The notes under the pieces were generated by a model. That model was given only the letters and a program-made list of their open reading frames with translations. It had not been told where the DNA came from and did not search any database. The translations under genes and the position numbers were made by a program. Positions 4,439 to 43,428 of a stretch of DNA of 64,000 nt are shown piece after piece. The stretch is taken from the IMG/VR virus record IMGVR_UViG_3300042402_002564, positions 182,503 through 246,502 of that record; one strand, 5' to 3'. Position 1 is the first letter of the stretch. The number at the start of each line of letters is the position of its first letter.

Positions 4439-4446
4439 TAAAATAT

Positions 4447-4473
4447 AAGGAGGTAAATCTGCCTCCTCTTTTT
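4447..4473 (+). terminator. Rho-independent terminator
   Basis: aggagg...cctcct stem followed by T tract. Confidence 0.7.
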
Positions 4474-4494
4474 GTCCTTTTACTATGAAACAAA

Positions 4495-5034
4495 ATGTCT
4501 GAAATTCCTGATAAAAATAAAAATTTTACTTCCATTTACGGAGACTTTATCGCAACTGAAGATTCTTATCCTTCGCCCGACACTATTTCTTTTGCTGGAT
4601 CTAGACTTTACGGTGGAATGAGTGATCAATCATATTGGGAAAGTGATGGGATTAGTCTTACTGGTAATCCTGCTCCCATGGGCGAAGACCGTATCACTTT
4701 AAATCCACCAACCCCCAAAGATGAATCGCAAAACAATTTTTGGAAATTTGGTGAAGGTAAAACTCTCAAAGCAGTAGAAGATTACATTATCAGCACTTAT
4801 AAAGCACATTACGCATCTGATAATTCTAAAGTTCAAGTTCTTGATATTATTGATGCAATTGGTGATGGTGTTCCATTTTGCCGAGATAATCTGATTAAAT
4901 ATTCTTCTCGTTTTGGTAAAAAAGAGGGGATGTCTCGTCTGGATGCACTAAAGATTATTCACTACGGAATTCTTCTTTATCATTTTGCTGGATTTAATAA
5001 TGAAACTTCGAAATCAAACTATGAAACTTTCTGA
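4495..5034 (+). CDS. Conserved cyanophage protein (DUF3310-like C-terminus)
   Basis: YIISTYKAHY...NLIKYSSRFGKK...DALKIIHY pattern. Confidence 0.7.
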   Translation: MSEIPDKNKNFTSIYGDFIATEDSYPSPDTISFAGSRLYGGMSDQSYWESDGISLTGNPAPMGEDRITLNPPTPKDESQNNFWKFGEGKTLKAVEDYIISTYKAHYASDNSKVQVLDIIDAIGDGVPFCRDNLIKYSSRFGKKEGMSRLDALKIIHYGILLYHFAGFNNETSKSNYETF

Positions 5035-14618: not shown

Positions 14619-15995
14619 ATGGAAAGTGTTGAATTAACAGTCTTAAAAAATTTAATATTTAATGAAGAATATTCTAGAAAAGTAATACCATTTATTAATC
14701 TAGAATATTTTGAAGATAATTCTCAAAAAATTATTTTTGAAGAAACTGTAAAATTTATCTTAAAATATAATTCTCAAATTACACTAGAATCACTTTTAAT
14801 TGAAATATCTAACAGAAAAGATATAAATGAGAGTGATATTAAATCTTTAACATCTTTAATCAATTCATTCGAATATCAACCATCCGACCAAAAGTGGTTA
14901 ATTGATACTACTGAAAAATGGTGCAGAGACCGTGCCATTTATCTCGCTTTAATGGAATCCATTTATATTGCTGATGGTAAGGATGATAAAAAAAATAGAG
15001 ATGCAATTCCTTCAATTTTATCTGATGCTTTAGCGGTATCATTTGATAATAATATTGGACATGATTATCTTTTAAATTATGAAGAAAGATATAATTATTA
15101 TCACAGGAAGGAAGATAAAATCGAGTTTGATTTGGAATATTTTAATAAAATTACTAAAGGTGGTCTCCCAAATAAAACATTAAATATTGCCCTTGCAGGC
15201 ACTGGTGTCGGTAAATCTTTGTTCATGTGCCATGTCGCATCTTCTGTCTTAGTTCAAGGAAAAAATGTCTTATACATTACTCTCGAAATGGCAGAAGAAA
15301 AAATTGCTGAGAGGATTGATGCAAATCTATTAAACGTTCCTATTCAACAGTTATCAGAATTACCAAAGGCAATGTTTGAAAGTAAAGTCAATACACTTGC
15401 CAGTAAAACACAAGGGTCTTTAATTATTAAAGAATATCCAACAGCATCTGCACATAGTGGACATTTTAAAGCATTGCTTAATGAATTAGCACTTAAAAAA
15501 TCTTTTAAACCAGATATTATTTTTATTGATTATCTTAATATCTGTTCTTCTTCCAGATATAAGGGAAATAGTAACATTAATTCTTATACGTTTGTAAAAG
15601 CAATTGCAGAAGAACTTCGTGGTCTTGCCGTGGAATTTAACGTTCCAATTGTATCCGCTACTCAAACTACTCGTAGTGGTTATGGTAATTCTGATGTAGA
15701 ACTTACTGATACATCAGAGTCTTTTGGTCTTCCAGCAACTGCAGACCTTATGTTTGCTCTTATCAGTACTGAAGAATTAGAAAATCTTGGGCAAATTATG
15801 GTAAAACAATTAAAAAATCGTTATAATGACCCAACAATCTATAAAAGATTTATTGTAGGTATCGACAGAGCAAAAATGAGATTGTATGATTGTGAACAAT
15901 CTGCCCAAAATGATGTTATTGACAATAATGAATATTCTGAATCTGAACAGGATAAAACAGTAAAAAAAGAAAAATTTAATGGATTTAAATTTTAA
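14619..15995 (+). CDS. gp41: Replicative DNA helicase gp41
   Basis: AGTGVGKS, YITLEM, IDYLNI, SATQTTR, SESFGLPATAD. Confidence 0.97.
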   Translation: MESVELTVLKNLIFNEEYSRKVIPFINLEYFEDNSQKIIFEETVKFILKYNSQITLESLLIEISNRKDINESDIKSLTSLINSFEYQPSDQKWLIDTTEKWCRDRAIYLALMESIYIADGKDDKKNRDAIPSILSDALAVSFDNNIGHDYLLNYEERYNYYHRKEDKIEFDLEYFNKITKGGLPNKTLNIALAGTGVGKSLFMCHVASSVLVQGKNVLYITLEMAEEKIAERIDANLLNVPIQQLSELPKAMFESKVNTLASKTQGSLIIKEYPTASAHSGHFKALLNELALKKSFKPDIIFIDYLNICSSSRYKGNSNINSYTFVKAIAEELRGLAVEFNVPIVSATQTTRSGYGNSDVELTDTSESFGLPATADLMFALISTEELENLGQIMVKQLKNRYNDPTIYKRFIVGIDRAKMRLYDCEQSAQNDVIDNNEYSESEQDKTVKKEKFNGFKF

Positions 15996-16042
15996 TAGTA
16001 TTTTGGTAAAGAGTTTTATATTCTTTACCTTTTTTTATTACC

Positions 16043-16050
16043 TATAAATA
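16043..16050 (+). promoter_or_regulatory. T4-type late promoter TATAAATA heading glycan island 1
   Basis: Exact gp55 consensus about 25 nt upstream of ATG 16075, after a terminator-like hairpin. Confidence 0.65.
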
Positions 16051-16074
16051 AAATCACGAATAAGAATATAATTA

Positions 16075-17154
16075 ATGAAAAAATTATTTAAAATATTGAC
16101 AAGTGAAAGGGTTGAGTATAATAAAAAGAGTATAAAAATCTTTGATATGATGAGATATTCATCTCATATTACTAATATTTTAGAAAGTGATAAAGATAAT
16201 TATATTAAAAATGTATGCTCATTTTTAGAAAAAAAGATAAGTGACAATACAATATTTTTTATTGATGATGAACGGTTTGAACCACAATATCAAAAAATTG
16301 AATTATTCTTTGAGTGTATAAAAAAAATAGATAGCAAACATAAAAATATAATTTATATTGTAAAAACTGAAATATTTGCTGATTATTTTGAAAAATATGA
16401 GATACAAAATTATATATTTGAACCACTGTTAGAAGTCATTAATTTTTATTACGGATCATTTAGAATAAGAAAATCTTTAATCGGAAATAAAATAAAGGAC
16501 GTGCCATTTTGCTCATTAAATGGGACAAAAAATCAAGTTAGAGAATTTTTGTTATATAGATTGAACGATTATAATTTGTTACCTGAAGGATACGTTACTG
16601 CTTGTGGGCAATTTTTTCTAGACCTGAATGAAGACATTAGAAATAATATATCCAAAGATAAATTTTTTGATAAATTTTATTATGATGGAAATCATAAATA
16701 TCATCAAGATAAAAATTTAGTAAATATTCTTTATATTGATAAAAATATTCCAGGTAATATATTTTTAACTGTCGAATCATTTAACTATGATAAAGTAGAA
16801 GAATCACTGAGACCATTATATACTGAGAAAACTTCTACTCCATTTTTGACAAAAAGAATACCTTTAATAATTGGATATAAAGATATTATTCAAGATCTTA
16901 GAATAGGTGGATTTGATATGTTTGATGATATAATTAACTATGAATATGATGAAATTGATCACATAGATTATCAAAAAAAGATTGACTTATGTATAAAAAA
17001 CAATTTACATATTCTTGAACATAATGATTTTTATGATAATTTAGAAATTGATAAGAGATTGGAATATAATAAAAAACATTATAATATATGGGTAGAAAAT
17101 CAAATTTTAAACTTCGAATCTAATATAGAAGAAAAATTAAAGTTATTTGTTTAA
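16075..17154 (+). CDS. Hypothetical protein, glycosyltransferase-like C-terminus
   Basis: TEKT..PF...IP.IIG...LR..GFD.FDDII.Y.YD pattern; very AT-rich. Confidence 0.5.
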   Translation: MKKLFKILTSERVEYNKKSIKIFDMMRYSSHITNILESDKDNYIKNVCSFLEKKISDNTIFFIDDERFEPQYQKIELFFECIKKIDSKHKNIIYIVKTEIFADYFEKYEIQNYIFEPLLEVINFYYGSFRIRKSLIGNKIKDVPFCSLNGTKNQVREFLLYRLNDYNLLPEGYVTACGQFFLDLNEDIRNNISKDKFFDKFYYDGNHKYHQDKNLVNILYIDKNIPGNIFLTVESFNYDKVEESLRPLYTEKTSTPFLTKRIPLIIGYKDIIQDLRIGGFDMFDDIINYEYDEIDHIDYQKKIDLCIKNNLHILEHNDFYDNLEIDKRLEYNKKHYNIWVENQILNFESNIEEKLKLFV

Positions 17155-17160
17155 TACATT

Positions 17161-17691
17161 ATGAAAGATACATTTATTACTGGTAAAATAGATAGTAATC
17201 TAATTGGAGATTTTAAAAACATAGATTATCCTGGAAGAAGGCAATTTAGAGATGATGAGACTGTTGAGAGGTGGAAAAATCTCGGACATTTGTATGTAAA
17301 TTATACTGGCTTTATTAGAGAAGAATATCGAGGATTGCCAGACTGGTGTGAAAATATAATTTTAGAAATAAAAAAACAACTAAATGTTTGCAACACTTCT
17401 TGTTCATTATATTGTATGCCTCCAGGTACAATAATGCCAGAGCATCAAGATGCATACTTAAATTATAAAAAAATATTTAATATTGGTGAGGTTGATAAAA
17501 TTTGTAGGATATTGGTGTTTATGGACGATTGGAAATCTGGACACTATTTTGAAGTTTGTGACAATCCAATAATAAACTGGAAATCTGGTGATTATTGTAT
17601 GTGGATTGGAAATACTCCACACATTGCTGCTAATATTGGAAGAGAAAATAGATATACATTACAAATAACTGCAACGATTGACGATGAGTAA
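17161..17691 (+). CDS. Fe(II)/2OG-dependent oxygenase-like (cupin) protein
   Basis: PGTIMPEHQD (HxD) ... W..GD ... PHIAAN.G...RYTLQIT. Confidence 0.75.
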   Translation: MKDTFITGKIDSNLIGDFKNIDYPGRRQFRDDETVERWKNLGHLYVNYTGFIREEYRGLPDWCENIILEIKKQLNVCNTSCSLYCMPPGTIMPEHQDAYLNYKKIFNIGEVDKICRILVFMDDWKSGHYFEVCDNPIINWKSGDYCMWIGNTPHIAANIGRENRYTLQITATIDDE

Positions 17692-18409
17692 AAGAAGAGC
17701 CGTTATAGATGAACTAGTAGAACAGTATCCAAAGTATTGTTCTTCTTTCACGTTCAAACTCCAAAAAGGAATACCTGGAGAAGTAATTCATAAAGAAGGA
17801 TTTGTTAATTGCTATATTGATTCGATAAACTATCTTGTTTATATGCATATTGATAAGTGTGGAAGTACCTCTATTACAACCGCATTGGAAGATCAAAAAC
17901 CTTACTTTTTAAGAATGGATAAGATTCCAAAGTCTGAAGAGTTTGCTAAACTTTTAGTGGAAAAAGAATATAAATTTTTTACTGTTGTTCGTGATCCAGT
18001 TTCTAGGTGGATGTCTGGATTGAACGAATTTATGTGTAGATATAGACCACCAATCAAATATGTAATAAATCAACTAAAAGATAAAAGATATGTTTTTGAT
18101 GAACATACAGCACCCCAACATTTATTTTTAAGATTGTGTATAGAAAATGATGCTAATCTTACTTGTATAAAAATGAATTCTGATATGGAGAAAAAAATAA
18201 ATGACGTTATTAGATGCTCTTTGAAAAATGAATCTACTAGAACTTCATACGTTCCATTAAAACTTCCACATTTAAGAAATTCCAAGTATTTTATACCGAA
18301 TTATATAAGTGTTTGTAAAAAATTATATGATGTTTATATAAAACCAGATACTACTCATTTTGATAAACTTTACAGCATAGACATTGACCTTTATAAAAAC
18401 GCAATATGA
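17684..18409 (+). CDS. Sulfotransferase (Sulfotransfer_2-like)
   Basis: PAPS motifs HIDKCGSTSI and VVRDPVSRWMS. Confidence 0.8.
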   Translation: MSKRRAVIDELVEQYPKYCSSFTFKLQKGIPGEVIHKEGFVNCYIDSINYLVYMHIDKCGSTSITTALEDQKPYFLRMDKIPKSEEFAKLLVEKEYKFFTVVRDPVSRWMSGLNEFMCRYRPPIKYVINQLKDKRYVFDEHTAPQHLFLRLCIENDANLTCIKMNSDMEKKINDVIRCSLKNESTRTSYVPLKLPHLRNSKYFIPNYISVCKKLYDVYIKPDTTHFDKLYSIDIDLYKNAI

Positions 18410-19020
18410 ATAACTTTAATACAGTAGAAAAATTTGAAAAAATCATAGCAAATTTTTTTGGATCTCCTTATGCAGTAGCAACAGATTGCTGTACTCATGC
18501 TATAGAACTATGTTTAAGGTATGAAAAATATGATAATATACAAATTCCTGAGCATACTTATATCTCTATACCATTTACAGCAGAAAAACTTAATTTAAAA
18601 TGGGAGTGGAAAAAAAATTATTCGTGGTGTGAATACTATCATATTTGGAATACAAACATAATAGATGCTGCAGTTTTTTGGGAAAAAAATGGTTATATTC
18701 CGAATACTTACATGTGTTTAAGTTTTCAGTATAAAAAACATTTAAATCTTGGTAGGGGTGGTATGATATTATTGGATAACTATGAATCTTATAAAGAACT
18801 CAAAAAAATGGTGTATGATGGAAGAACTTCTGAAAAACCTTGGATGGAACAAAATATTGATACGATAGGATATCATTATTATATGACGCCAGAAGTTGCT
18901 GAAACTGGCATACATAAATTTAGTAAAATTTCTGAAAAACAAACAAAAAAATGGGGATATCTAGATTATCCTTTTTTGCCAGATATGGAGGTGTTTAAAA
19001 AAAATGGATTTAGAAAATAA
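18406..19020 (+). CDS. Short DegT/DnrJ/EryC1/StrS PLP sugar aminotransferase
   Basis: AVATDCCTHAIEL, IIDAA, SFQYKKHL..GRGGMI (PLP Lys region); only 204 aa. Confidence 0.8.
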   Translation: MNNFNTVEKFEKIIANFFGSPYAVATDCCTHAIELCLRYEKYDNIQIPEHTYISIPFTAEKLNLKWEWKKNYSWCEYYHIWNTNIIDAAVFWEKNGYIPNTYMCLSFQYKKHLNLGRGGMILLDNYESYKELKKMVYDGRTSEKPWMEQNIDTIGYHYYMTPEVAETGIHKFSKISEKQTKKWGYLDYPFLPDMEVFKKNGFRK

Positions 19021-19882
19021 ACTTAAAGGTCTCCCCCCAGTTTTTTATTTGAACCTTGATCATAGGACAGATAGAAAAGAATATATGGAAAATCAGTTTA
19101 AAGAAAGAGGTATAACTGATTATACTAGAATATCTGCTTCTAGATTTGCAACATCAAAAATTGATGAGTGGGGTCATAGATTAGACTTGATGCTATTGGC
19201 TAAATCTGATGCATCCATTGTAATGAATCAGTTTACTACAATAATTGATTGGTATAATTCTGGTATATCAGAAACTTGTATAATAATGCAAGATGACCTA
19301 AGTTTGGAATTAATTGATTATTGGTCATTCGACTGGAATACTATCGTTAAAAGTTTGCCATATAATTGGGATTGTGTTCAATTTTATCATTGTCACAATG
19401 AAGAAATGCGTATGCATTTGCATAAAAGAAGTTATGGTAGTTCTTCTGCTGCTTGTTACATGATTAATAGATGGTACGCAGAAAAGTTAATAAAGATGCA
19501 TTTGCAACCAGATAACTCATTTAAACTTAAAAATAATTTGAAGGATGTAAGTGTTCCTAAAGAGTGTTATAGTAGTGATGACTTCTTGTTATATCAAATT
19601 GGTGTGAGTTATAGTTTACCAATTCTATGTTTAAACCAAAGACTTTCTCAAACTCCTGATAATAAAATGCAAGAAGATGAGACTGAAGATGACTATGATC
19701 CAGTTATAAGCATATATCACAACAAAATTCACGATATATTGGCTAGTACTTGCGTAAGGAGATGGTGGGAAAATGAAAGTTCAAAATATAAAGCAGAAGA
19801 TATTCTGAGTTATGGTGGTTCTATACATAAAAAGATGATTGTACCAATACCAAAGTTTAATAGAAAGGTGCTTCCAAAATGA
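19004..19882 (+). CDS. Glycosyltransferase family 25-like, paralogue 1
   Basis: YLNLDHRTDR, MQDD, LPYNWDCVQ. Confidence 0.8.
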   Translation: MDLENKLKGLPPVFYLNLDHRTDRKEYMENQFKERGITDYTRISASRFATSKIDEWGHRLDLMLLAKSDASIVMNQFTTIIDWYNSGISETCIIMQDDLSLELIDYWSFDWNTIVKSLPYNWDCVQFYHCHNEEMRMHLHKRSYGSSSAACYMINRWYAEKLIKMHLQPDNSFKLKNNLKDVSVPKECYSSDDFLLYQIGVSYSLPILCLNQRLSQTPDNKMQEDETEDDYDPVISIYHNKIHDILASTCVRRWWENESSKYKAEDILSYGGSIHKKMIVPIPKFNRKVLPK

Positions 19883-20742
19883 ACGTAGAATTGAATAAAT
19901 TAAAAACAATAGGATTTCCAAAAATCTTTTATTTGAATTCTGATTCTAGACCAGATAGAGGAAATTACATGGAATGGTCTTTTGAAAAGTGGGGAATAAA
20001 AAACTATGAGCGAGTTCCTACTAGTAGATTTTCACCAACAAATTACCATGATTGGTCGGAATTAATTTTAGATGAAAATATTTTACAGACACCTGAAGAA
20101 ATATCAAAAACTATTAATCATTTGAAAACAATAGTTGATTGGTATGATAATGGTGATGAAGAATATTGTATGATAATGGAAGACTTGATTGATATGAAAT
20201 CAATAGACCAATGGATGTTTGATTGGCAAACACTTTATAAAAATCTACCTTATAATTGGGATTGTATACAGTTATTTTTTTATAGCAATAGAACCATCAA
20301 CATGCATCTAAAACCAAAAGATGATGATACAAAAGGTGTATATTGTTATATGATAACTAGGCAGTTTGCTAAAAAAATTAAAGAACTTCATTATCATGAT
20401 GGAAGATTCAAATTTTTTATTAATAATAGAAATTTAAAATTACCAGAATATAAGTATGGGTCATTAGAATCCTTTTTATTTGAATTGGGAATAACCTATA
20501 CTTTACCAGTATTTTATTTGAGTTTAAAACATTTTGGTGAACCTAAAGAACTCGAAGATACATTGTGTAAACTCTCTTCGGAATCTATTGAGTTTTGGTG
20601 GAAAATAAAGTCTAAAGAATTTTCTATGCAAGAGTTCTTTTCATATAATAAAAGATATGATTGGAAAATGGAAGTTCTTTTTGATTTAAAAGAAAAGCAA
20701 GTGTATATGGATAAAGTTGAAAAAATAATGTTATGGATTTAA
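19879..20742 (+). CDS. Glycosyltransferase family 25-like, paralogue 2
   Basis: YLNSDSRPDR, IMEDL, LPYNWDCIQL. Confidence 0.78.
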   Translation: MNVELNKLKTIGFPKIFYLNSDSRPDRGNYMEWSFEKWGIKNYERVPTSRFSPTNYHDWSELILDENILQTPEEISKTINHLKTIVDWYDNGDEEYCMIMEDLIDMKSIDQWMFDWQTLYKNLPYNWDCIQLFFYSNRTINMHLKPKDDDTKGVYCYMITRQFAKKIKELHYHDGRFKFFINNRNLKLPEYKYGSLESFLFELGITYTLPVFYLSLKHFGEPKELEDTLCKLSSESIEFWWKIKSKEFSMQEFFSYNKRYDWKMEVLFDLKEKQVYMDKVEKIMLWI

Positions 20743-21587
20743 AAAATAAATTAAAAAATATGCCAAAAGTCTATTATTTTAATTTAGATAATAGAACAGA
20801 TAGAAAAAAATATATGGAAAAACAATTTGATAGGTGGGGCATAAACTATCAAAGAGTATCTGGAACCAAATACCTAGCTTCAAAAAACAAAGAATGGAAG
20901 CATTTAATTATTGATGTAAAAAACTACAAATTGTTAGTTCCTATTGCAGCAAATGCTATTTCTCATTTGGAGTTTTTAAAAAAATGGTATGAAGAAACAA
21001 CAGATCCGTATGTTCTGTTGATGGAAGATGATTATGATTTAAATCTAATAGAATATTGGCATTTTGATTGGGATTACTTAATGTCTAGACTTCCATATGA
21101 TTGGGATTGTCTGCAGTTGGGATTTGAGAATCCAATAGGAATACCTTTTTATCTACATCCAATGGCAACATCTCATGATTTTGGACCATGCTTACTTAAT
21201 AGGGATTATGTATACAAACTAATATCCTTGCATTGTGTTGATGATAAGTACAAACTAATTAATACCATATCTAATGGTGCTTGGAATGCTGAGGAAGGTG
21301 GATGTGGATCTGGAACAGTAGATTACTTTATATGTCATTGTGGTAAAACTTATTCCATACCATTAATAACAATAAATCCATCTTTTGGTAGTTTTGAGAA
21401 TAATAGTTTACTTCAAAAACTCTATAGAAATAATGGCGATGTGATGGCTAGAAATACATATTATTATTGGTGGCAAAATGAAAGGGATAAGTTTACTTTA
21501 GATGATTTTTTTACTTATGGAAAAAAACATGATCGCAAAATGATATTAGACCAAAAACAATATGGAAACTATAGACCTAAAAAATAA
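20733..21587 (+). CDS. Glycosyltransferase family 25-like, paralogue 3
   Basis: YFNLDNRTDR, SH, MEDD, LPYDWDCLQL. Confidence 0.82.
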   Translation: MDLKNKLKNMPKVYYFNLDNRTDRKKYMEKQFDRWGINYQRVSGTKYLASKNKEWKHLIIDVKNYKLLVPIAANAISHLEFLKKWYEETTDPYVLLMEDDYDLNLIEYWHFDWDYLMSRLPYDWDCLQLGFENPIGIPFYLHPMATSHDFGPCLLNRDYVYKLISLHCVDDKYKLINTISNGAWNAEEGGCGSGTVDYFICHCGKTYSIPLITINPSFGSFENNSLLQKLYRNNGDVMARNTYYYWWQNERDKFTLDDFFTYGKKHDRKMILDQKQYGNYRPKK

Positions 21588-22467
21588 ATTAAAAGGGTTT
21601 CCCCATGTTTATTATTTTAATCTTGACCAAAAAAGAGATCGTAAAAAATATATGGAAACCCAATTTGAACGTTGGGGGATAGAATATACTAGAATGTCAT
21701 CTAACATATATTCTATATGGAATTATGATGATTGGACCACAAATAAAGTAACTGGCGATAAAAGTGATACTGATCAAAGACTTTATGCTCCAGCAATGAT
21801 GCATTTTGAGTTATTTAAAAGATGGTTACATGATACAGATGAAGAATACATTCTCGTAATGGAAGATGATTATGATTTAAATTTAATTGAATACTGGCAT
21901 TTTGATTGGAATTATTTGATGTCTAAATTGCCTTATGATTGGGATTGTATTCAATTAGGATTTGAAACTTCAAATGTAATATCATTTTATCTTCATCCAG
22001 TAAAAGAAGACTATTCTTTTGGACCCTGCTTGTTTAAAAGAGAATATGTAGAGAAACTTTTAAGACTTCATTCTGAGGGATTTAAATATAGGTTTGATTT
22101 TAATATTTCTAATTGTCATTGGAGAGATAGACGAAATTATAAAAATGCTGCAGGTTCTTTGGAATATTTTATGTGTCAATCTGGAAGAACTTATTCAATT
22201 CCATTAATTGCATTAAACCCTTATTTTAGTTTTTGGTACTATAAAGATAAATGGATACCTAAATCTTATTTTCAAATGTGCTATGATTCTTATTATGATT
22301 GGTGGCAGAATGATAGAGATAAGTTTACTTTGGATGAATTTTTTACTTATGGAAAAGTAAATGATAAAATTATGGAAAGAAATCTCGAATATTGTGACAC
22401 TAAATATTTTGAAGAAAAGACCAAAGTATGTAGAGAAAAATTCTTGAAAAAATATGGATTTAAGTAA
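21562..22467 (+). CDS. Glycosyltransferase family 25-like, paralogue 4
   Basis: YFNLDQKRDR, MEDD, LPYDWDCIQL. Confidence 0.82.
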   Translation: METIDLKNKLKGFPHVYYFNLDQKRDRKKYMETQFERWGIEYTRMSSNIYSIWNYDDWTTNKVTGDKSDTDQRLYAPAMMHFELFKRWLHDTDEEYILVMEDDYDLNLIEYWHFDWNYLMSKLPYDWDCIQLGFETSNVISFYLHPVKEDYSFGPCLFKREYVEKLLRLHSEGFKYRFDFNISNCHWRDRRNYKNAAGSLEYFMCQSGRTYSIPLIALNPYFSFWYYKDKWIPKSYFQMCYDSYYDWWQNDRDKFTLDEFFTYGKVNDKIMERNLEYCDTKYFEEKTKVCREKFLKKYGFK

Positions 22468-23254
22468 TAAGTTATTCGGAATACCAAAAGTATATTATTT
22501 TAATTATGATGAGCACAAAAACAGAAATTACCATATGGATAGAAATCTTGGTAATTTAAAGGTTGCTAATTATGAAAGAATTTCGGCATCAAAATATACA
22601 TCCAAAAATTATGATGAATGGAAAAATTTAATCATAGATGTTGAGAATTATAAGTTAACACCAAATATTGCTGGATATGCAATCACAGTATTAGAATTTT
22701 TAAAAAAGTGGTTGGAGGAAACTGATGAAACAGAATTAATAATAACAAAAGATACTATTGATTTTGATTTAATTGAATATTGGAAATTTGATTGGAATTA
22801 TTTAAAATTTAGACTTCCTTATGATTGGGATTGTATTCAACTTGGATTTGAGAATTCTCAATACATACCATTTTATTTACATCCAATACTTCCTTCTAGT
22901 ACTTTTGGTCCATCGTTACTCAATAGATATTATGTAAAAAAAATAGTTAAATTGCATTGTATTGGTAGTCAATATAAACTGAATAATTATATTGCAAATA
23001 TGTATTTTAGCGGACAATCGGGAACAGTTGATTATTTCATTGGGCACAACGGAAATACTTATTCGATGCCATTATTTCCAAATAAACCAGAATTCTTTGA
23101 TAAAAATACTAAAAAATATGTTCTAGTTTATATCTGTAAAAATGCATATCATGAATGGTGGAAGAAAGAAAGTAGCAAATTTAATCTAGATGAGATATTT
23201 ACTTACGGAAAATATAATGATATTGGAATGGTAAAAAAACTTCGTAAAAAATAA
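22454..23254 (+). CDS. Glycosyltransferase family 25-like, paralogue 5 (EDD motif degenerate)
   Basis: Same scaffold (LPYDWDCIQL) but TKDT in place of MEDD. Confidence 0.72.
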   Translation: MDLSNKLFGIPKVYYFNYDEHKNRNYHMDRNLGNLKVANYERISASKYTSKNYDEWKNLIIDVENYKLTPNIAGYAITVLEFLKKWLEETDETELIITKDTIDFDLIEYWKFDWNYLKFRLPYDWDCIQLGFENSQYIPFYLHPILPSSTFGPSLLNRYYVKKIVKLHCIGSQYKLNNYIANMYFSGQSGTVDYFIGHNGNTYSMPLFPNKPEFFDKNTKKYVLVYICKNAYHEWWKKESSKFNLDEIFTYGKYNDIGMVKKLRKK

Positions 23255-23262
23255 TTAAAATT

Positions 23263-24081
23263 ATGAATATTAATCTGTCAAACAAGTTAAAAGGGCTTCC
23301 TCATATCTATTATGTAAATTTGGATAATAGAACTGATAGAAAAAAATATATGGAATCCCAGTTTGATTTTTGGAGAATAAAAGATTATACTAGAGTGTCT
23401 TCTTCAAAATACTTAGCATCTGAGTCTGAATCTTGGGCAAATAAAGTTATTGATGGGAGCATAAAAAATTTATCCTCATATGTTGTTGGTAATGCAATAA
23501 CCCACTTAGAACTTCTAAAAGATTGGGTTAATAATTCTAGCGATGATTATGTGATATTAATGGAAGATGATTATGATTTGAATTTAATACAGTATTGGAA
23601 ATTTGATTGGCAATACCTTATGTCTAGGTTGCCTTATGACTGGGACTGTATTCAATTGGGATTTGAATCAAAAGAATTTATTCCATTTTTTCTACATCCA
23701 AAATTAAGACATAGTTATTTTGGACCTGTTATGATTACTAGAGAATATGCTAAAAAGATATTAAGATTGCATTGTGTTGGGGAAGATAAGTATTCTTTAG
23801 ATAAATTGATGGGAGATTATAATTTTAAAGTTTGTTCTACTTCAGTAGATTATTTTATGGGACATACTGGCAGAACATATTCTATTCCATTGATAACTAC
23901 AAATGTTGATCTTGGTAGCACTGAAAGTGACATACAAATAGAGAGGCGTCATCATGTTAAATCCAGAGCCGCATATTATTATTGGTGGATGAAGAGAAGT
24001 ATGAAATATAGTTTAGATGAATTTTTTACCTATGGAAAACCAAACGATCAAGAGATGGTTATTAGTACGGTTGACTATTAA
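23263..24081 (+). CDS. Glycosyltransferase family 25-like, paralogue 6
   Basis: YVNLDNRTDR, TH, MEDD, LPYDWDCIQL. Confidence 0.82.
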   Translation: MNINLSNKLKGLPHIYYVNLDNRTDRKKYMESQFDFWRIKDYTRVSSSKYLASESESWANKVIDGSIKNLSSYVVGNAITHLELLKDWVNNSSDDYVILMEDDYDLNLIQYWKFDWQYLMSRLPYDWDCIQLGFESKEFIPFFLHPKLRHSYFGPVMITREYAKKILRLHCVGEDKYSLDKLMGDYNFKVCSTSVDYFMGHTGRTYSIPLITTNVDLGSTESDIQIERRHHVKSRAAYYYWWMKRSMKYSLDEFFTYGKPNDQEMVISTVDY

Positions 24082-24111
24082 ATAAAAAATGATTATAATG
24101 TCTTTATTTAA

Positions 24112-25086
24112 ATGTATAGTACTAATGAGTGGGGAAAATTAAAAAAAATTGTAGTTGGTGTTGCTGACTATGCTGTAGTTCCCCCAGTTGATAAAAGTTT
24201 GCGGACTATTAACTATGCTGATCTTAAGGATACTTCTGAAATCAAGGTTGGACCATATCCAGAGCAAGTAATTGAAGAAGCAAATGAAGATTTAGAAATA
24301 CTTGTAGATTTTTTAAAGTCTCAAGATGTAGAAGTATTGAGACCAAAAAGAGAAAAAACAGATTATTATAACTATTGCCCAAGAGATTGTGTATTCGTTC
24401 ATGGTGAAGTTGCATTAGCGACACCAATGCCATTAAGATCCAGATTGGGTAATTGGAGATCTTATTCTCATCATTTGACCGATGTTATTGAAATGCCTTG
24501 TTGTTATTTCGATGATCTTTACAATGAAGAATGTGTTGGAAATCCAGACATTCTTGCATTGACTGAAGTAACTCCTGCATTTGATGCCGCCAATATAATT
24601 CGTGCAAATAATGAGATTTTATATCTGGTATCAAATAGTGGAAATGTTGCGGGTGCAAAATATTTACAATCACTTTTGGATGAACATTATGATGGAGAAG
24701 TTCAGGTAAATCTTCTCCAAAATGTATATTCATATGTTCATATTGATACTACTATTGCATTTTTAAGAGAAGGTCTTTTACTTGCAAATCCAAGTAGAAT
24801 AAAAGATAAAGATGATTTGCCTGAACCATTTAATGAGTGGGAAATAATTTGGTGCCCAGAACCTGTAGACACTGGATACTATCCAGGTTATAATCATGCA
24901 TCACCTTGGTCCAATATGAACTTGCTTAGTGTTAGTCATGAGTTAGTAGTCTTGGAAGAACATCAACATCCAACTAGACAAGTATTGGAAAGATATGGGA
25001 TTGAGTGTGCTATGCTTCCCATGAGACAACAAAGAACATTAAGTGGTGGATTTCATTGCGTAACTTTAGACCTTGAGAGAGAATAA
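24112..25086 (+). CDS. Amidinotransferase (AGAT/StrB1-like)
   Basis: NEWGKL..IVVG, CPRD, FDAA, SGN..G, HIDTT, GGFHC; Asp-His-Cys triad intact. Confidence 0.9.
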   Translation: MYSTNEWGKLKKIVVGVADYAVVPPVDKSLRTINYADLKDTSEIKVGPYPEQVIEEANEDLEILVDFLKSQDVEVLRPKREKTDYYNYCPRDCVFVHGEVALATPMPLRSRLGNWRSYSHHLTDVIEMPCCYFDDLYNEECVGNPDILALTEVTPAFDAANIIRANNEILYLVSNSGNVAGAKYLQSLLDEHYDGEVQVNLLQNVYSYVHIDTTIAFLREGLLLANPSRIKDKDDLPEPFNEWEIIWCPEPVDTGYYPGYNHASPWSNMNLLSVSHELVVLEEHQHPTRQVLERYGIECAMLPMRQQRTLSGGFHCVTLDLERE

Positions 25087-25088
25087 TT

Positions 25089-26306
25089 ATGGAAATTGGA
25101 TTTATTGGATTGGGTAAATTGGGTATGGCATGTGCGGAAGAAATAGTTCTGCATGGGCATAATGTATATGGGTATGATATTTGTGATAAAAATAGTAACC
25201 TAGTACAAGTTAAAAAAAGTATTGAGGATGTTGTAAAAATTAGCGATATTGTTTTTATTGCTGTTCCAACTCCCCATGATCCAGAATATGATGGTAGTAA
25301 GCCATGTATGGACTTGAATCCAAAAGATTTTAGTTATGACATTGTAAAGGAGTGTTTGATTGAATCAAATTGTTATATGAATAAGAATCAACTTTTGGTT
25401 CTTATTTCTACAGTTCTTCCTGGAACAACTAGAAATCAATTTTCGAGATTAGTCCAGAATACTCGATTTGTTTATAATCCATATCTTATTGCAATGGGGT
25501 CTGTTGCTTGGGATATGGTCAACCCAGAAATGGTAATGATTGGTACTGAAGATGGTACTGAAACTGGGGATGCTAAACAACTCATTGAATTCTATAAAAC
25601 TGTTATGGAAAATGATCCCCCATATGTTGTTGGTACGTGGGATGAATGTGAATGTATTAAAGTTTTTTATAATACATTTATTAGCAACAAAATTAGTTTT
25701 GTGAATATGATACAAGATGTTGCCGAAAAATCTAAGAATATTAATGTTGATGTTGTTACAAGTGCGTTATGCCTTGGTGCATCTAGAATCATTAGTCCTC
25801 ATTATATGAAGGCAGGAATGGGTGATGGTGGTGCTTGCCATCCAAGAGATAATATTGCCCTCCGTTATCTTGCAGAAAAACTAGATCTGGGGTATGATTT
25901 CTTTGAAGGAATTATGCGTTCTAGAGAAGTTCAAGCAAAAAATCTTGCTAAAAAGTTAGTTGAACTTGCTGGCGATGTCCTACCAATTGTCATTCATGGA
26001 AAAGCATATAAACCAAAGGTTCCTTATATTGATGGGAGTTATAGTCTTTTAGTTGGGCATTATTGTGCTGAGATGGGCAAACCACCAATTTATGTTGACA
26101 AATATACTGGAGACGAATATACTCCTGATGGTCCTGCAGTTTTTCTTCTTGCTCACAGTGCATCTACAACTTACTGGCATGATGAGAGTAATGATGAACT
26201 TTATTGCAATATTCCAAAAGGAAGTGTTGTTCTGGATCCGTGGAGAAAATTTAAGTCAAATGATGTTAACGTAATTTATTACGGCAACACTCGATTTGGT
26301 TCTTGA
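25089..26306 (+). CDS. UDP-glucose/GDP-mannose dehydrogenase family protein
   Basis: GLGKLG Rossmann, AVPTP, STVLPGT, KVFYNT, GGACHPRD. Confidence 0.9.
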   Translation: MEIGFIGLGKLGMACAEEIVLHGHNVYGYDICDKNSNLVQVKKSIEDVVKISDIVFIAVPTPHDPEYDGSKPCMDLNPKDFSYDIVKECLIESNCYMNKNQLLVLISTVLPGTTRNQFSRLVQNTRFVYNPYLIAMGSVAWDMVNPEMVMIGTEDGTETGDAKQLIEFYKTVMENDPPYVVGTWDECECIKVFYNTFISNKISFVNMIQDVAEKSKNINVDVVTSALCLGASRIISPHYMKAGMGDGGACHPRDNIALRYLAEKLDLGYDFFEGIMRSREVQAKNLAKKLVELAGDVLPIVIHGKAYKPKVPYIDGSYSLLVGHYCAEMGKPPIYVDKYTGDEYTPDGPAVFLLAHSASTTYWHDESNDELYCNIPKGSVVLDPWRKFKSNDVNVIYYGNTRFGS

Positions 26307-26353: not shown

Positions 26354-26764
26354 ATGCAAATCATTGATACAAAAAAATATATTGAATTTGTTCGCCAAAC
26401 TACAAGTCCTGCAAGTAGCGACTTTACACAACTTCTTTCCCGAATGACCGAACTTGAGGCAACTCATGATGCCGATGTTCCTCGTTTGATTACAGCAGCT
26501 TTTGGTATGAGTGCCGAAGCTGGAGAGTTTACTGAAGTGGTTAAAAAAATTATTCTTCAAGGTAAACCTTATAATGAAGAAAATGCCTTCCACTTAAAAC
26601 GTGAACTTGGTGATATTTGTTGGTATCTTGCTCAAGCGTGTATGGCACTTGATACTAATTTTGAAGAAATCCTTCAAATGAATTATGAAAAGTTAAGTGC
26701 TCGTTATCCAGAAGGAACATTTGATGTTTACCGTTCCGAAAATAGGGTAGAAGGAGATCTCTGA
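26354..26764 (+). CDS. mazG: MazG-like nucleotide pyrophosphohydrolase
   Basis: AEAGEFTEVVKK...ELGDICWY...N.EKL.ARYP. Confidence 0.92.
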   Translation: MQIIDTKKYIEFVRQTTSPASSDFTQLLSRMTELEATHDADVPRLITAAFGMSAEAGEFTEVVKKIILQGKPYNEENAFHLKRELGDICWYLAQACMALDTNFEEILQMNYEKLSARYPEGTFDVYRSENRVEGDL

Positions 26765-26825
26765 TAATATGCCTCCCATATTGGGAGGTTTTTTTATAAA
26801 TATTTTTATAAAAAGAATTAGGAAA

Positions 26826-27452
26826 ATGGATTTTTGTAACCCAGACGGAATGAGAGATTTGTACAACTCTCTATATCTTTCAGAAGAAGTTGATATTGAA
26901 GAAGGTAAGAAAGAGTTTCCTTCTGCTAAGGTTGCTAAACAAGAGGAAAAGCATAGAAAAGCAGCTGTTTCTCAAAAAGGTGGTAGTAGAGGTTCTTCTA
27001 AAAATCGTGCAATGAAGATGAGTTCAATTCGTGGTGCTATAGAACGTGGAGAAGATCCAAGAGCAGATGGATATGGTGGTGCTCGTGCTGCTCGCGGAAA
27101 TCCACCTGAAGACCATCGTGCGGCATTTTCAAAAAATCCTTTAAACAATCCTCCAAGACCAGTTAAAAAACCTGGAGTTAATAAAGAGGAATTTGACGCT
27201 ATTGTAGAATATTTGTTTGTTGAAGGTTATGCTGATACTTTTGAATCTGCAGAATTAATGGCAGAAAATATTAGTGAAGTTTGGATTGATGAAATTCTTG
27301 AAGCATATAAAGAGTTTCCAACTGCAAAAGTAATGAATAAAGCAGGAAAACTTATGGGTTCTTCTGCTGGTAAAACTGATTCCGCAAGTAAGAAGAAAGA
27401 AAAGCGTGGTATTAAGATGATGGATACAATGATGCAGCACACACCAGATTGA
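26826..27452 (+). CDS. Charged putative internal head protein
   Basis: Late promoter TATAAATA at 26795; K/R-rich; EGYA.T.E.A..M..N.SE.W domain shared with 39642 ORF. Confidence 0.6.
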   Translation: MDFCNPDGMRDLYNSLYLSEEVDIEEGKKEFPSAKVAKQEEKHRKAAVSQKGGSRGSSKNRAMKMSSIRGAIERGEDPRADGYGGARAARGNPPEDHRAAFSKNPLNNPPRPVKKPGVNKEEFDAIVEYLFVEGYADTFESAELMAENISEVWIDEILEAYKEFPTAKVMNKAGKLMGSSAGKTDSASKKKEKRGIKMMDTMMQHTPD

Positions 27453-27510: not shown

Positions 27511-27519
27511 ATGGAGTAT

Positions 27520-27590
27520 GGGGGATTAGTTTAGTGGTAAAACGGGTGCTTTGCAAGCATCAATCACCAGTTCGACTCTGGTATTCTCCA
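27520..27590 (+). tRNA. tRNA-Ala(UGC)
   Basis: Cloverleaf, anticodon TGC, G3:U70, A73. Confidence 0.92.
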
Positions 27591-27593
27591 TAT

Positions 27594-27676
27594 GCCTAAG
27601 TGGTGGAATGGTAGACACAGCGGACTTAGAATCCGCCGCCTTAAAAAGCGTGGAAGTTCGAATCTTCTCTTGGGCA
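27594..27676 (+). tRNA. tRNA-Leu(UAG)
   Basis: gcgga-CTTAGAA-tccgc, long variable arm. Confidence 0.92.
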
Positions 27677-27708
27677 CTAAATATTTTAAATGCAGTTAAA
27701 ATTCCAAA

Positions 27709-42660: not shown

Positions 42661-42668
42661 GGTACTAT
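42640..42668 (+). promoter_or_regulatory. Sigma70-type promoter for tmRNA/tRNA-Arg
   Basis: TTGACA-17 nt-TACTAT. Confidence 0.7.
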
Positions 42669-42674
42669 ATAGAT

Positions 42675-42911: not shown

Positions 42912-42915
42912 TTAT

Positions 42916-43390: not shown

Positions 43391-43428
43391 TTGACCGCCA
43401 CAGTTCGGTCGTTAAACATAAACTGTTC

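What the first reader, a model, noticed from the sequence alone, without database searches (positions are those of the whole stretch)
16043..26306. Late-expressed island for a guanidinylated/sulfated glycan: amidinotransferase + aminotransferase + sulfotransferase + oxygenase + six GT25 + NDP-sugar dehydrogenase
Seen: a ~10 kb AT-rich, tightly coupled 12-gene block between gp41 and mazG, headed by an exact TATAAATA late promoter. Known: a DegT-type aminotransferase followed by an amidinotransferase is the route to guanidino-cyclitols in streptidine synthesis (StsC/StrB1). Cyanobacterial amidinotransferases (CyrA, SxtG) act in toxin pathways. Inference: the phage makes an amidino-amino(uronic) sugar and assembles a sulfated oligosaccharide with its own GT set. 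Late timing favours virion-protein or cell-surface decoration over replication-coupled DNA modification, though DNA hypermodification is not excluded.
Basis: partly seen in the sequence, partly recalled or inferred. Interest (0 to 1): 0.75.

Follow-up and report, generated by a model that had tools for sequence, protein, structure and literature searches.

The report
Cyanophage cassette for a guanidino-sugar glycan
A T4-like cyanophage carries a 10-kb, 12-gene block, shared by dozens of uncultured relatives, that appears to build a short sugar chain carrying guanidino and sulfate groups; what the chain is attached to is still unknown.

Summary
Twelve intact, tightly packed + strand genes (16075-26306) lie between the gp41 helicase and mazG. 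A terminator hairpin and an exact TATAAATA precede them. The closest cultured relative, S-SRM01, has gp41 abutting mazG, so this is a clean insertion.

Identities mostly hold:
- a StrB1-type amidinotransferase (far closer to StrB1 than to AGAT or SxtG)
- a PAPS-type sulfotransferase
- a small Fe/2OG dioxygenase
- a UDP-glucose-dehydrogenase-like enzyme
- six ordered GT25-like paralogues.

Two corrections. The "DegT aminotransferase" is a half-size (about 200 aa) form whose length is conserved in thousands of metagenomic proteins. The first gene (O1) is an unknown, lineage-specific add-on.

The amidinotransferase has relatives in at least 185 viral contig stretches. Among the 80 loci kept, it travels with the mini-DegT (76 of 81 loci, counting S-SCSM2R), the GT25-like genes (75) and the dioxygenase (67-70). 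No cellular genome has the combination. All genes are under purifying selection.

The late promoter is limited to the five O1-bearing loci. Elsewhere the cassette follows gp41 directly.

Best reading: a phage-specific pathway that makes a guanidino sugar and assembles a decorated oligosaccharide. The acceptor (virion protein, host envelope, less likely DNA) is unresolved. I rate it a new variant of a known kind.

The parts
14619..15995 (+). gp41 DnaB-like replicative helicase (left flank, not part of the cassette)
   Evidence: Pfam DnaB_C 2.6e-20. In S-SRM01 its stop abuts mazG.
16005..16039 (+). Terminator-like hairpin (10-bp stem, 5-nt loop) plus T-run
   Evidence: Stems are conserved in L005.
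16043..16050 (+). T4-type late-promoter motif TATAAATA, 24 nt upstream of the O1 start
   Evidence: Present only in the five O1-bearing loci.
16075..17154 (+). O1, 359 aa, unknown function. Lineage-specific addition (GC 21.6%).
   Evidence: No Pfam, PHROG, NCBIfam or PDB hit, alone or as a profile. 169 distant representatives. Found in only 5 of 81 loci. dN/dS 0.11. No profile similarity to GT11 or GT25.
17161..17691 (+). O2, 176 aa, small Fe(II)/2-oxoglutarate dioxygenase
   Evidence: Weak Pfam Asp_Arg_Hydrox hit. AF2 pLDDT 93.6; Foldseek top hits are Fe/2OG dioxygenases AndA, AsqJ and P4H. H95, D97, H154 and R164 are invariant in 47 homologues.
17684..18409 (+). O3, 241 aa from the ATG (ORF opens at TTG 17678), PAPS-type sulfotransferase
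   Evidence: Pfam Sulfotransfer_2 30.8 bits against a cut-off of 22. The K-x-G-S-T-S and R-D-P-x-x-R-x-x-S positions are invariant or nearly so in 26 homologues.
18406..19020 (+). O4, 204 aa, half-size DegT-family PLP enzyme ('mini-DegT')
   Evidence: Pfam DegT 4.3e-15, matching only profile positions 35-83 and 165-244. At least 7978 homologous clusters; all 120 listed are about 195-205 aa. AF2 pLDDT 90.7. Foldseek hits are sugar aminotransferases of 360-420 aa, with query TM-scores (TMq) of 0.56-0.72. K111 and D87 are invariant.
19004..19882 (+). O5, GT25-like glycosyltransferase, paralogue 1
   Evidence: PHROG 2835 6e-41. Positional orthologue in every gp41-mazG locus.
19879..20742 (+). O6, GT25-like glycosyltransferase, paralogue 2
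   Evidence: PHROG 2835 1.9e-38.
20733..21587 (+). O7, GT25-like glycosyltransferase, paralogue 3
   Evidence: Pfam Glyco_transf_25 30.3 bits against a cut-off of 24. PHROG 2835 3.5e-43.
21562..22467 (+). O8, GT25-like glycosyltransferase, paralogue 4 (present only in the six-GT loci)
   Evidence: PHROG 2835 4.5e-38.
22454..23254 (+). O9, GT25-like glycosyltransferase, paralogue 5 (acidic motif partly altered)
   Evidence: PHROG 2835 2.9e-32.
23263..24081 (+). O10, GT25-like glycosyltransferase, paralogue 6
   Evidence: PHROG 2835 2.2e-49. 33% identical (E 3e-46) to the window's canonical GT25 at 56841-57641.
24112..25086 (+). O11, 324 aa, StrB1-type amidinotransferase
   Evidence: PDB 1bwd 5.5e-59 over the full length. 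D92, D158, H210, D212 and H315 are invariant in all 60 homologues and C316 in 59 of 60. 4951 clusters at E<=1e-30.
25089..26306 (+). O12, 405 aa, UDP-glucose/GDP-mannose-dehydrogenase-family enzyme
   Evidence: Pfam central and N-terminal domains. Below the cut-off of the NCBIfam nucleotide-sugar dehydrogenase model TIGR03026 (136.6 against 189.8 bits). Best PDB hits are UDP-glucose 6-dehydrogenases, 9e-24. C250 invariant.
26354..26764 (+). mazG (right flank)
   Evidence: Pfam MazG.
26771..26802 (+). Second terminator-like hairpin (26771-26789) followed by TATAAATA (26795-26802); closes the transcription unit

Best explanation
This is a phage-specific, conserved glycan-building and glycan-tailoring cassette inserted between gp41 and mazG. 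SHOWN: it encodes intact enzymes with conserved catalytic residues. They are a StrB1-type amidinotransferase, a half-size DegT-family PLP enzyme, a small Fe/2OG dioxygenase, a PAPS-type sulfotransferase, a UDP-glucose-dehydrogenase-like enzyme and six GT25-like glycosyltransferases kept in a fixed order. The genes are co-inherited in many uncultured T4-like cyanophages and are under purifying selection. INFERRED: a sugar carbon is oxidised to a ketone (by the dioxygenase, or the dehydrogenase where present). The mini-DegT converts the ketone to an amine. The amidinotransferase then transfers an amidino group from arginine to make a guanidino sugar, which is the streptidine logic of oxidation, StsC, StrB1. 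The five or six distinct GT25-like enzymes each add one residue to build a short oligosaccharide in the cytoplasm. In this lineage the chain also receives a uronic acid and a sulfate. The product is placed on a non-DNA acceptor that ends up exposed: a phage particle protein or a host envelope glycolipid. My evidence does not separate these two. I lean slightly to the particle in this lineage because a conserved terminator plus late promoter heads the unit.
For: Enzyme identities and conserved catalytic residues. Clean insertion relative to S-SRM01. Co-occurrence in 81 loci: mini-DegT 76, GT25-like 75 (333 genes), dioxygenase 67-70, dehydrogenase 38-42, sulfotransferase 36. In a second architecture the three core genes are adjacent in the order mini-DegT, dioxygenase, amidinotransferase. 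GT order O5, O6, O7, [O8], O9, O10 is conserved; paralogues are 28-52% identical and orthologues 35-71%. dN/dS is 0.02-0.16 for all 12 genes, against 0.04 for gp41. The phage amidinotransferase clade is 63-100% identical internally but at most 41% to any of 185,579 species genomes, and none of the 80 cellular loci carries another cassette gene within 10 kb. Other architectures add further sugar-tailoring enzymes: a NodU/CmcH-type carbamoyltransferase, radical SAM enzymes and a P4H-like oxygenase. The island GTs are paralogues of the cyanophage GT25 that sits in heptose/fucose 'LPS' clusters. Promoter and terminator.
Against: No substrate or product is known for any of these proteins. The mini-DegT lacks the C-terminal domain of canonical sugar aminotransferases, so it may not act on NDP-sugars or may not be an aminotransferase. 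The dioxygenase could hydroxylate a protein rather than a sugar. No initiating transferase, flippase, polymerase or candidate acceptor gene lies in the island. Only one of the six GTs passes Pfam's GT25 cut-off. The late promoter is absent from most relatives. No collagen-like repeat was found in the window.
Confidence: 0.6

Rival explanations
1. DNA hypermodification. The dioxygenase hydroxylates a base in phage DNA, the GT25-like enzymes glycosylate it, and the amino or guanidino sugar adds positive charge that blocks host nucleases.
For: In about 38 loci the cassette sits inside the replication module and usually follows gp41 directly, with no promoter motif. Phage GTs are known to put varied glycans on 5hmC (bioRxiv 10.1101/2023.12.21.572611). 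A 2OG dioxygenase is part of the conserved core.
Against: Neither paper on phage DNA glycosylation mentions GT25, aminotransferases, amidinotransferases or sulfotransferases. The dioxygenase's top 50 fold matches are small-molecule and prolyl hydroxylases, not TET, JBP or AlkB. A five-to-six-enzyme chain plus sulfate is unprecedented on DNA. The amidinotransferases cited for deazaguanine DNA (QueF-L, ArcS) are unrelated proteins. I did not survey the whole window for hydroxymethyl-pyrimidine or methyltransferase genes.
Confidence: 0.1
2. A free secondary metabolite. The cassette makes a soluble aminoglycoside-like guanidino pseudo-oligosaccharide (the 'antibiotic synthesis genes' view) that acts on competing microbes or phages.
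For: The S-SCSM2R authors read the mini-DegT, amidinotransferase and radical SAM genes this way (PMC12801897). StrB1 is the closest solved relative. BtrR ranks among the mini-DegT fold hits. A carbamoyltransferase and radical SAM enzymes occur in sister architectures.
Against: No cyclitol-forming enzyme, kinase or exporter was detected in the island: the Pfam and NCBIfam scans gave no such family. The GTs are of the GT25 (LPS and collagen) type. Five or six conserved GTs point to a glycoconjugate. The benefit to a lytic phage is unclear.
Confidence: 0.1
3. Not one pathway. The dioxygenase and sulfotransferase hydroxylate and sulfate a protein such as a tail-fibre or collagen-like protein. The GT25-like enzymes glycosylate hydroxylated residues as collagen GTs do. 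The mini-DegT and amidinotransferase do something separate.
For: Iyer et al. 2010 (PMC2938197) described neighbourhoods of beta-hydroxylase-family dioxygenases with sulfotransferases and predicted that tail-collar or collagen-like proteins are the substrates. O2 hits that Pfam family weakly, and O3 overlaps its end. The closest solved relatives of the GT profile are Mimivirus R655 (1e-7) and procollagen galactosyltransferase 1 (0.013) (PMC9546862). A P4H-like oxygenase precedes the GT run in architecture B.
Against: The dioxygenase tracks the mini-DegT and amidinotransferase, and lies adjacent to them in about 30 loci that have no sulfotransferase. The solved-structure comparison covers only the first ~100 residues and may be biased, because, to my knowledge, no bacterial LOS GT25 structure has been solved. 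No collagen-like repeat is present in the window.
Confidence: 0.15
4. An ordinary amino-acid-metabolism auxiliary gene. The protein is a glycine amidinotransferase or DDAH-type enzyme (guanidinoacetate/creatine or arginine metabolism) that merely sits beside glycan genes.
For: JGI names for family members are 'glycine amidinotransferase' or 'N-dimethylarginine dimethylaminohydrolase'. A global-ocean AMG survey discusses a viral creatine pathway (PMC11360552).
Against: The protein scores about 100 bits higher against StrB1 than against AGAT and aligns end to end with the compact StrB1. It has near-obligate linkage to the mini-DegT and GT25-like genes. No GAMT-like methyltransferase was detected in the island.
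Confidence: 0.03

Closest known systems
StrB1, L-arginine:inosamine-phosphate amidinotransferase of streptomycin biosynthesis (PDB 1bwd)
   Same: Full-length alignment (residues 5-323 to 8-339), E 5.5e-59. The Cys, His and Asp catalytic positions are conserved. It has StrB1's compact size rather than the longer AGAT form. It is accompanied by a DegT/StsC-family PLP enzyme.
   Different: Encoded by a phage. No inositol or cyclitol genes or kinase lie nearby. The neighbours are glycosyltransferases. The substrate is unknown. The clade is separate from all cellular homologues (at most 41% identity).
DegT/DnrJ/EryC1/StrS sugar aminotransferases (e.g. GDP-perosamine synthase 3bn1, BtrR 2c7t, CalS13 4zas)
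   Same: The PLP-binding large-domain fold (Foldseek probability 1.0). The Schiff-base lysine and the cofactor-binding aspartate are invariant.
   Different: About 200 aa instead of 360-420. It lacks about 35 N-terminal residues, about 40 internal residues and the whole C-terminal domain. This short length is the conserved state of a very large metagenomic family.
'LPS' gene clusters of large T4-like cyanophages (P-SSM2, S-SM2, S-SSM7; the cyanophage gene cluster that Sullivan et al. 2010 label T4-GC 266, a GT25)
   Same: Phage-borne sets of sugar-nucleotide enzymes and glycosyltransferases of unknown target. The island GTs are paralogues of that GT25. The window also carries such a cluster at 48171-57641.
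   Different: Different genome position (gp41-mazG). A six-fold GT25-like array instead of one copy. Adds a guanidinylation trio and a sulfotransferase. Absent from all cultured phages searched except S-SCSM2R.
Synechococcus phage S-SCSM2R ORF301-310 cluster (PMC12801897)
   Same: The only cultured phage found with the core. Amidinotransferase 65% identical, mini-DegT 58%, dioxygenase 26%, and four GT25-like genes.
   Different: Different locus and architecture: it has a radical SAM enzyme, a GT2 and a P4H-like oxygenase, and no sulfotransferase or dehydrogenase. Published as 'antibiotic synthesis genes' whose role the authors call unclear.
Giant-virus self-encoded glycosylation machinery (Mimivirus R655 and related; collagen GT25 enzymes)
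   Same: A virus carries its own GT25-type transferases and amino-sugar enzymes. R655 is the closest solved relative of the GT profile.
   Different: Similarity covers only the first ~100 residues (nucleotide-binding part). Bacterial host. No collagen-like gene seen in the window. No amidinotransferase is known to me in the giant-virus systems.
Phage DNA glycosylation systems (T4 glucosyltransferases; 5hmC glycan hypermodification)
   Same: Phage-encoded GTs located among replication genes. A 2OG dioxygenase is present.
   Different: Different GT families. No base-hydroxymethylation pathway was identified here. Sulfation and amidination are unknown on DNA.

Membership tests
Amidinotransferase family (guanidino-group-modifying enzyme superfamily), StrB1 subtype | Catalytic Cys-His-Asp set in the conserved sequence contexts | tested here: met
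   The alignment to 1bwd keeps the catalytic positions. D92, D158, H210, D212 and H315 are invariant in 60 of 60 homologues and C316 in 59 of 60.
Amidinotransferase family (guanidino-group-modifying enzyme superfamily), StrB1 subtype | Full-length similarity closer to StrB1 than to glycine amidinotransferases | tested here: met
   203 bits for StrB1, against 110 (HsvA), 107 (AGAT) and 97.5 (SxtG).
Amidinotransferase family (guanidino-group-modifying enzyme superfamily), StrB1 subtype | Curated family model above threshold | tested here: not met
   No Pfam or NCBIfam hit at E<=0.01. The family is recognised only through the PDB search.
Amidinotransferase family (guanidino-group-modifying enzyme superfamily), StrB1 subtype | Acceptor is a phosphorylated aminocyclitol | not testable with these tools
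No cyclitol synthase or kinase was detected in the island.
DegT/DnrJ/EryC1/StrS aminotransferases | PLP Schiff-base lysine and cofactor-binding aspartate | tested here: met
   K111 and D87 are invariant. The lysine aligns with that of solved enzymes.
DegT/DnrJ/EryC1/StrS aminotransferases | Two-domain architecture of about 360-400 aa including the C-terminal small domain | tested here: not met
   204 aa. Matches only profile positions 35-83 and 165-244 of 360. Target TM-scores (TMt) are 0.32-0.41 against full-length enzymes. All 120 listed homologues are about 195-205 aa.
CAZy GT25 / Pfam PF01755 | Score above Pfam's gathering threshold | tested here: inconclusive
   O7 passes (30.3 against 24). 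O5, O8 and O10 fall below it. O6 and O9 have no hit. Ten of 19 family members match. All six are in PHROG 2835 at 1e-32 to 1e-49, and O10 is 33% identical to a canonical GT25.
CAZy GT25 / Pfam PF01755 | Acidic metal and nucleotide-sugar binding motif after the N-terminal Rossmann-like half | tested here: met
   One aspartate (D102 in O10) is invariant across 19 members. The full acidic motif is seen in O7, O8 and O10, and altered forms in O5, O6 and O9.
Sulfotransferase family 2 (PF03567) | Family model above threshold, plus the 5'-phosphosulfate and 3'-phosphate binding motifs for PAPS | tested here: met
   30.8 bits against a cut-off of 22. Motif residues are invariant or nearly so in 26 homologues.
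UDP-glucose/GDP-mannose dehydrogenase family | N-terminal NAD domain, central domain and catalytic cysteine | tested here: met
   PF03721 and PF00984 are above their cut-offs. C250 is invariant. UDP-glucose 6-dehydrogenases are the best PDB hits.
UDP-glucose/GDP-mannose dehydrogenase family | C-terminal UDP-binding domain and an equivalog-level match that would fix the substrate | tested here: not met
   No PF03720 hit. The NCBIfam nucleotide-sugar dehydrogenase model TIGR03026 scores 136.6 against a cut-off of 189.8, and all equivalogs are far below their cut-offs.
Fe(II)/2-oxoglutarate dioxygenases | Double-stranded beta-helix fold with the H-x-D...H iron triad and a basic 2OG-binding residue | tested here: met
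   The fold matches dioxygenases. H95, D97, H154 and R164 are invariant. The Pfam hit is below threshold.
T4-type late transcription unit | TATAAATA at the right distance upstream of a gene start, in an intergenic position | tested here: met
   Promoter activity itself is not testable here, and the motif is absent from most related loci.

The most novel reading that the evidence does not exclude
T4-like cyanophages carry a widespread, phage-only pathway in which a half-size PLP enzyme, a small 2OG dioxygenase and a StrB1-type amidinotransferase install a guanidino group on a sugar. An ordered set of GT25-like enzymes builds that sugar into a charged (guanidinium plus sulfate or carboxylate) oligosaccharide displayed on the virion, or, more radically, on the phage DNA. 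To my knowledge, guanidino sugars are not known in any viral or bacterial surface glycan.
Probability: 0.3. Interest if true: 0.85.

Novelty: new variant of a known kind. Interest (0 to 1): 0.62.

Why it matters
Cyanophage 'LPS' genes have been an open question since 2005-2010. Sullivan et al. 2010 could not say whether they are functional or 'stuffer DNA'. This cassette gives a sharply defined, abundant and selectable case. Its amidinotransferase and mini-DegT each have thousands of distinct metagenomic variants, are phage-specific, and are strongly conserved.

Automatic pipelines label the amidinotransferase as glycine amidinotransferase or DDAH. That label would file it under creatine or arginine metabolism, whereas the gene context says glycan tailoring.

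If the product is a guanidinylated, sulfated glycan on virions or cells, it would be new glycan chemistry. It could also be a new determinant of phage-host or phage-grazer interaction in the most abundant marine phototrophs. The half-size DegT enzyme is also of interest to enzymologists as a minimal fold-type-I PLP protein.

Tried and rejected
- Megablast of the island against 50,697 phage records found nothing. tblastn with O1 also found nothing.
- O1 remains unassigned. Pfam, PHROG, NCBIfam and PDB searches gave nothing, alone or as a 43-sequence profile. Profile-profile comparison with GT11 and GT25-like alignments gave probability 0.2. I recalled a resemblance of one O1 motif to fucosyltransferases; it was not confirmed and I dropped it.
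- Single-sequence PDB searches for O2, O3 and O4 found nothing significant. A profile search for O2 also found nothing.
- No collagen-like (Gly-X-Y) runs of six or more were found in any frame of the window.
- A host origin for the cassette is rejected. No picocyanobacterial genome holds a close amidinotransferase, and no cellular locus holds a second cassette gene.
- The idea that the mini-DegT is a truncated or broken gene is rejected. Its length is conserved across thousands of clusters, its catalytic residues are invariant, and dN/dS is 0.09.
- Recent foreign origin inferred from AT-richness is rejected, because GC3 equals that of gp41 and mazG.
- The two papers on DNA glycan hypermodification contain none of the relevant enzyme terms.
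- The deazaguanine 'amidinotransferases' are unrelated proteins.

Full report
**What is there**

The window belongs to a T4-like cyanomyophage. Its DNA polymerase to uvsX region is about 80% identical to freshwater Synechococcus phage S-SRM01 and about 75% to marine phages.

Between the DnaB-like gp41 helicase (14619-15995) and mazG (26354-26764) lie twelve + strand ORFs, 16075-26306. They overlap by 4-26 nt or are separated by only 2-30 nt. In S-SRM01 the gp41 stop abuts the mazG start, so the block is a clean 10.3-kb insertion.

GC is 0.290 against 0.353 for the rest of the window. However, gp41 is equally AT-rich, and third-position GC (0.14-0.23) matches the flanks. The island is therefore compositionally at home in the phage.

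**Promoter and terminator**

- TATAAATA is exact at 16043-16050, 24 nt before the first ATG.
- It follows a terminator-like hairpin with a T-run at 16005-16039.
- A second hairpin (26771-26789) and TATAAATA (26795) close the unit after mazG.
- The motif count in the window (8) is not above chance (9.3 expected). But all eight are on the + strand, and seven lie outside coding sequence, mostly 10-35 nt upstream of a start, in a window that is about 88% coding.
- The spacer is 93% identical to L005, whose neighbouring genes have dS of 0.6-0.9.

The late-promoter observation therefore stands for this phage.

**Gene identities**

| Gene | Size | Assignment | Key evidence |
|---|---|---|---|
| O11 | 324 aa | StrB1-type amidinotransferase | PDB 1bwd 5.5e-59, 203 bits, end to end. 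HsvA, AGAT and SxtG score about 100-110 bits. Catalytic Asp, His and Cys conserved in 59-60 of 60 homologues. |
| O3 | 241 aa | PAPS-type sulfotransferase | Passes Pfam Sulfotransfer_2; both PAPS-binding motifs conserved. |
| O2 | 176 aa | Small Fe/2OG dioxygenase | AF2 pLDDT 93.6. Fold matches AndA, AsqJ and P4H. H-x-D...H...R invariant. |
| O12 | 405 aa | UDP-glucose-dehydrogenase-like | Catalytic cysteine present, but below equivalog thresholds and with no recognisable C-terminal domain. |
| O5-O10 | 266-301 aa | Six GT25-like glycosyltransferases | PHROG 2835, 1e-32 to 1e-49. One passes Pfam GT25. 28-52% identical to each other. |
| O4 | 204 aa | Half-size DegT-family PLP enzyme | See below. 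|
| O1 | 359 aa | Unknown | See below. |

Two points differ from the finding.

- **O4 is not an ordinary DegT enzyme.** It has 204 aa and matches only profile positions 35-83 and 165-244. It keeps the PLP lysine and aspartate but lacks the C-terminal domain. Its model (pLDDT 90.7) overlays the large domain of sugar aminotransferases of 360-420 aa. At least 7978 homologous clusters were scored, and all 120 listed are about 195-205 aa. It is a conserved mini-enzyme, not a truncation.
- **O1 has no detectable family.** This holds even as a profile. It occurs only in the five closest loci.

**Distribution**

A scan of IMG/VR with O11 found 185 related stretches. The 80 loci kept are 63-100% identical. 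Counts below are over 81 loci, which add cultured phage S-SCSM2R.

| Partner gene | Loci out of 81 |
|---|---|
| Mini-DegT | 76 |
| GT25-like genes (333 genes in total) | 75 |
| Dioxygenase | 67-70 |
| Dehydrogenase | 38-42 |
| Sulfotransferase | 36 |

Of the five loci lacking the mini-DegT, three are cut within 2.6 kb upstream of the amidinotransferase.

The main architectures (a few loci show further arrangements):

1. **gp41-mazG architecture (about 38 loci).** Order: dioxygenase, sulfotransferase, mini-DegT, five or six GTs, amidinotransferase, dehydrogenase.
2. **Second architecture (about 30 loci, elsewhere in the genome).** A P4H-like oxygenase, three or four GTs, then mini-DegT, dioxygenase and amidinotransferase side by side. 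These are usually followed by one more GT and a NodU/CmcH-type carbamoyltransferase.
3. **Radical SAM variants.** Others add radical SAM enzymes.

Further points:

- In the gp41-mazG architecture the GTs are positional orthologues in a fixed order, O5, O6, O7, [O8], O9, O10.
- All twelve genes show dN/dS of 0.02-0.16 against L005, like gp41 at 0.04.
- The amidinotransferase family has 4951 clusters at E<=1e-30.
- In 185,579 species genomes the best relatives are only 35-41% identical. They come from Vibrio, Bacteriovoracaceae, actinomycetes, Luminiphilus and others, and there is no close picocyanobacterial homologue.
- None of the 80 cellular loci has another cassette gene within 10 kb.
- Among cultured phages only S-SCSM2R carries the core. 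Its authors called the genes 'antibiotic synthesis genes' of unclear purpose.

**Timing**

Of the gp41-mazG loci without O1 that retain the gp41 end (about 28), 20 have the dioxygenase gene 3-23 bp after gp41. The rest have one small extra ORF between them. None has an ATAAATA motif there. The terminator and late promoter came with, or just before, the lineage-specific O1 gene. Late expression is thus a property of this lineage, not of the cassette, and cannot be used to choose the target.

**Mechanism**

The conserved core of mini-DegT, dioxygenase and amidinotransferase is best read as a three-step guanidinylation module: oxidise a carbon to a ketone, transaminate it, then amidinate the amine from arginine. 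This is the logic of streptidine synthesis and rests on established knowledge of StsC and StrB1.

The ordered, anciently diverged GTs fit an assembly line that adds one residue each. The sulfotransferase, dehydrogenase and, in other phages, the carbamoyltransferase and radical SAM enzymes look like optional tailoring steps.

All of these steps are inferred. Only the enzyme classes, their intactness, their linkage and their selection are shown.

**Acceptor**

I could not resolve it.

- *For an envelope glycolipid.* To my knowledge, bacterial GT25 enzymes act on LOS cores. The island GTs are paralogues (33% identity) of the window's canonical GT25 at 56841-57641. That gene is 55% identical to the S-SM2 gene Sullivan et al. 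label T4-GC 266, which sits among heptose, fucose and capsule genes.
- *For virion or other proteins.* The late promoter here points this way. The closest solved GT relatives are Mimivirus R655 and procollagen galactosyltransferase, although this comparison may be biased. Hydroxylases lie adjacent, and Iyer et al. predicted that beta-hydroxylase plus sulfotransferase pairs modify tail-collar or collagen-like proteins. The enzymes are phage-only.
- *For DNA.* The position in the replication module fits, but nothing else does.

**Comparison and novelty**

The kind, virus-encoded glycan machinery and cyanophage 'LPS' clusters, is known. New here are:

- the guanidinylation trio built around a half-size PLP enzyme
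- the six-fold ordered GT25-like array
- the sulfotransferase
- the gp41-mazG location
- the evidence that this is an abundant, conserved, phage-specific cassette.

I rate it a new variant of a known kind, interest about 0.6. No gene in the island is broken.

Noticed in passing
window 48171-57641 (+): A second glycan gene cluster headed by a wcaG RNA motif (RF01761, 96.6 bits, 48171-48274). In order: a radical SAM enzyme, GDP-mannose 4,6-dehydratase, a WcaG-like epimerase/reductase, GT11, GT6, DUF7796, a HAD phosphatase-nucleotidyltransferase fusion, an unknown ORF, a GT4-like gene, and a canonical GT25 that is 55% identical to the S-SM2 T4-GC 266 gene. Together with the island, the window holds at least 10 glycosyltransferases.
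   Followed up: partly
window 42646-47573 (+), also 27519-27677: A phage-borne cyanobacterial-type (permuted) tmRNA at 42646-42909 (RF01851, 113 bits). It is followed by 22 tRNA genes up to 47573, and two more tRNAs lie at 27519-27677. This explains the GC-rich stretch at 43-45 kb that has no long ORFs.
   Followed up: partly
window 62228-63480 (+): TATAAATA at 62228, then a PhotoRC-II RNA motif (62266-62360, 72 bits), then a 359-aa ORF (62401-63480). I take the ORF to be psbA from its position and length, but I did not search it.
   Followed up: no
window 8460, 16043, 26795, 32960, 39611, 43013, 45116, 62228: All eight exact TATAAATA motifs are on the + strand. Seven lie outside coding sequence, mostly 10-35 nt upstream of a start codon, so they behave as a real late-promoter set although their number is not above chance.
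   Followed up: yes
window 26769-27452: The first ATG of this ORF is overlapped by the terminator hairpin (26771-26789) and the TATAAATA at 26795. The real start is more likely the next in-frame ATG at 26826, and relatives align only from about residue 20.
   Followed up: partly
window 17678-17691: The sulfotransferase ORF opens at a TTG (17678), but an ATG two codons later (17684) is the likelier start. It overlaps the end of the dioxygenase gene by 8 nt.
   Followed up: partly
L047-L073 (e.g. L067:3277-14200): The sister architecture of the cassette carries a NodU/CmcH-type carbamoyltransferase (about 500 aa), a P4H-like 2OG oxygenase (about 390 aa) and several conserved small ORFs with no family (my clusters f9, f11, f12, f13). 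Other loci (L044, L045, L060, L079-L081) add one to three radical SAM enzymes.
   Followed up: partly
Campylobacter phages CP220, CPt10, CP20, F379 and others (hits H17-H30): These phages encode amidinotransferase-superfamily proteins about 23-25% identical to O11. Two Enterococcus phage records hit more weakly. Their role is unknown to me, and I did not examine their gene context.
   Followed up: no
L082 (S-SRM01) 4246-4827: S-SRM01 has a homing endonuclease between uvsX and gp41, and its gp41 abuts mazG. The uvsX-gp41-mazG stretch therefore accepts insertions in this phage group.
   Followed up: no
L031:12200-12784 and homologues (my cluster f35): In many marine gp41-mazG loci one or two extra 2OG-FeII_Oxy_5 oxygenase genes sit between the dehydrogenase and mazG, and two 115-aa ORFs sit between the dioxygenase and the sulfotransferase. 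Both are absent from this window.
   Followed up: no
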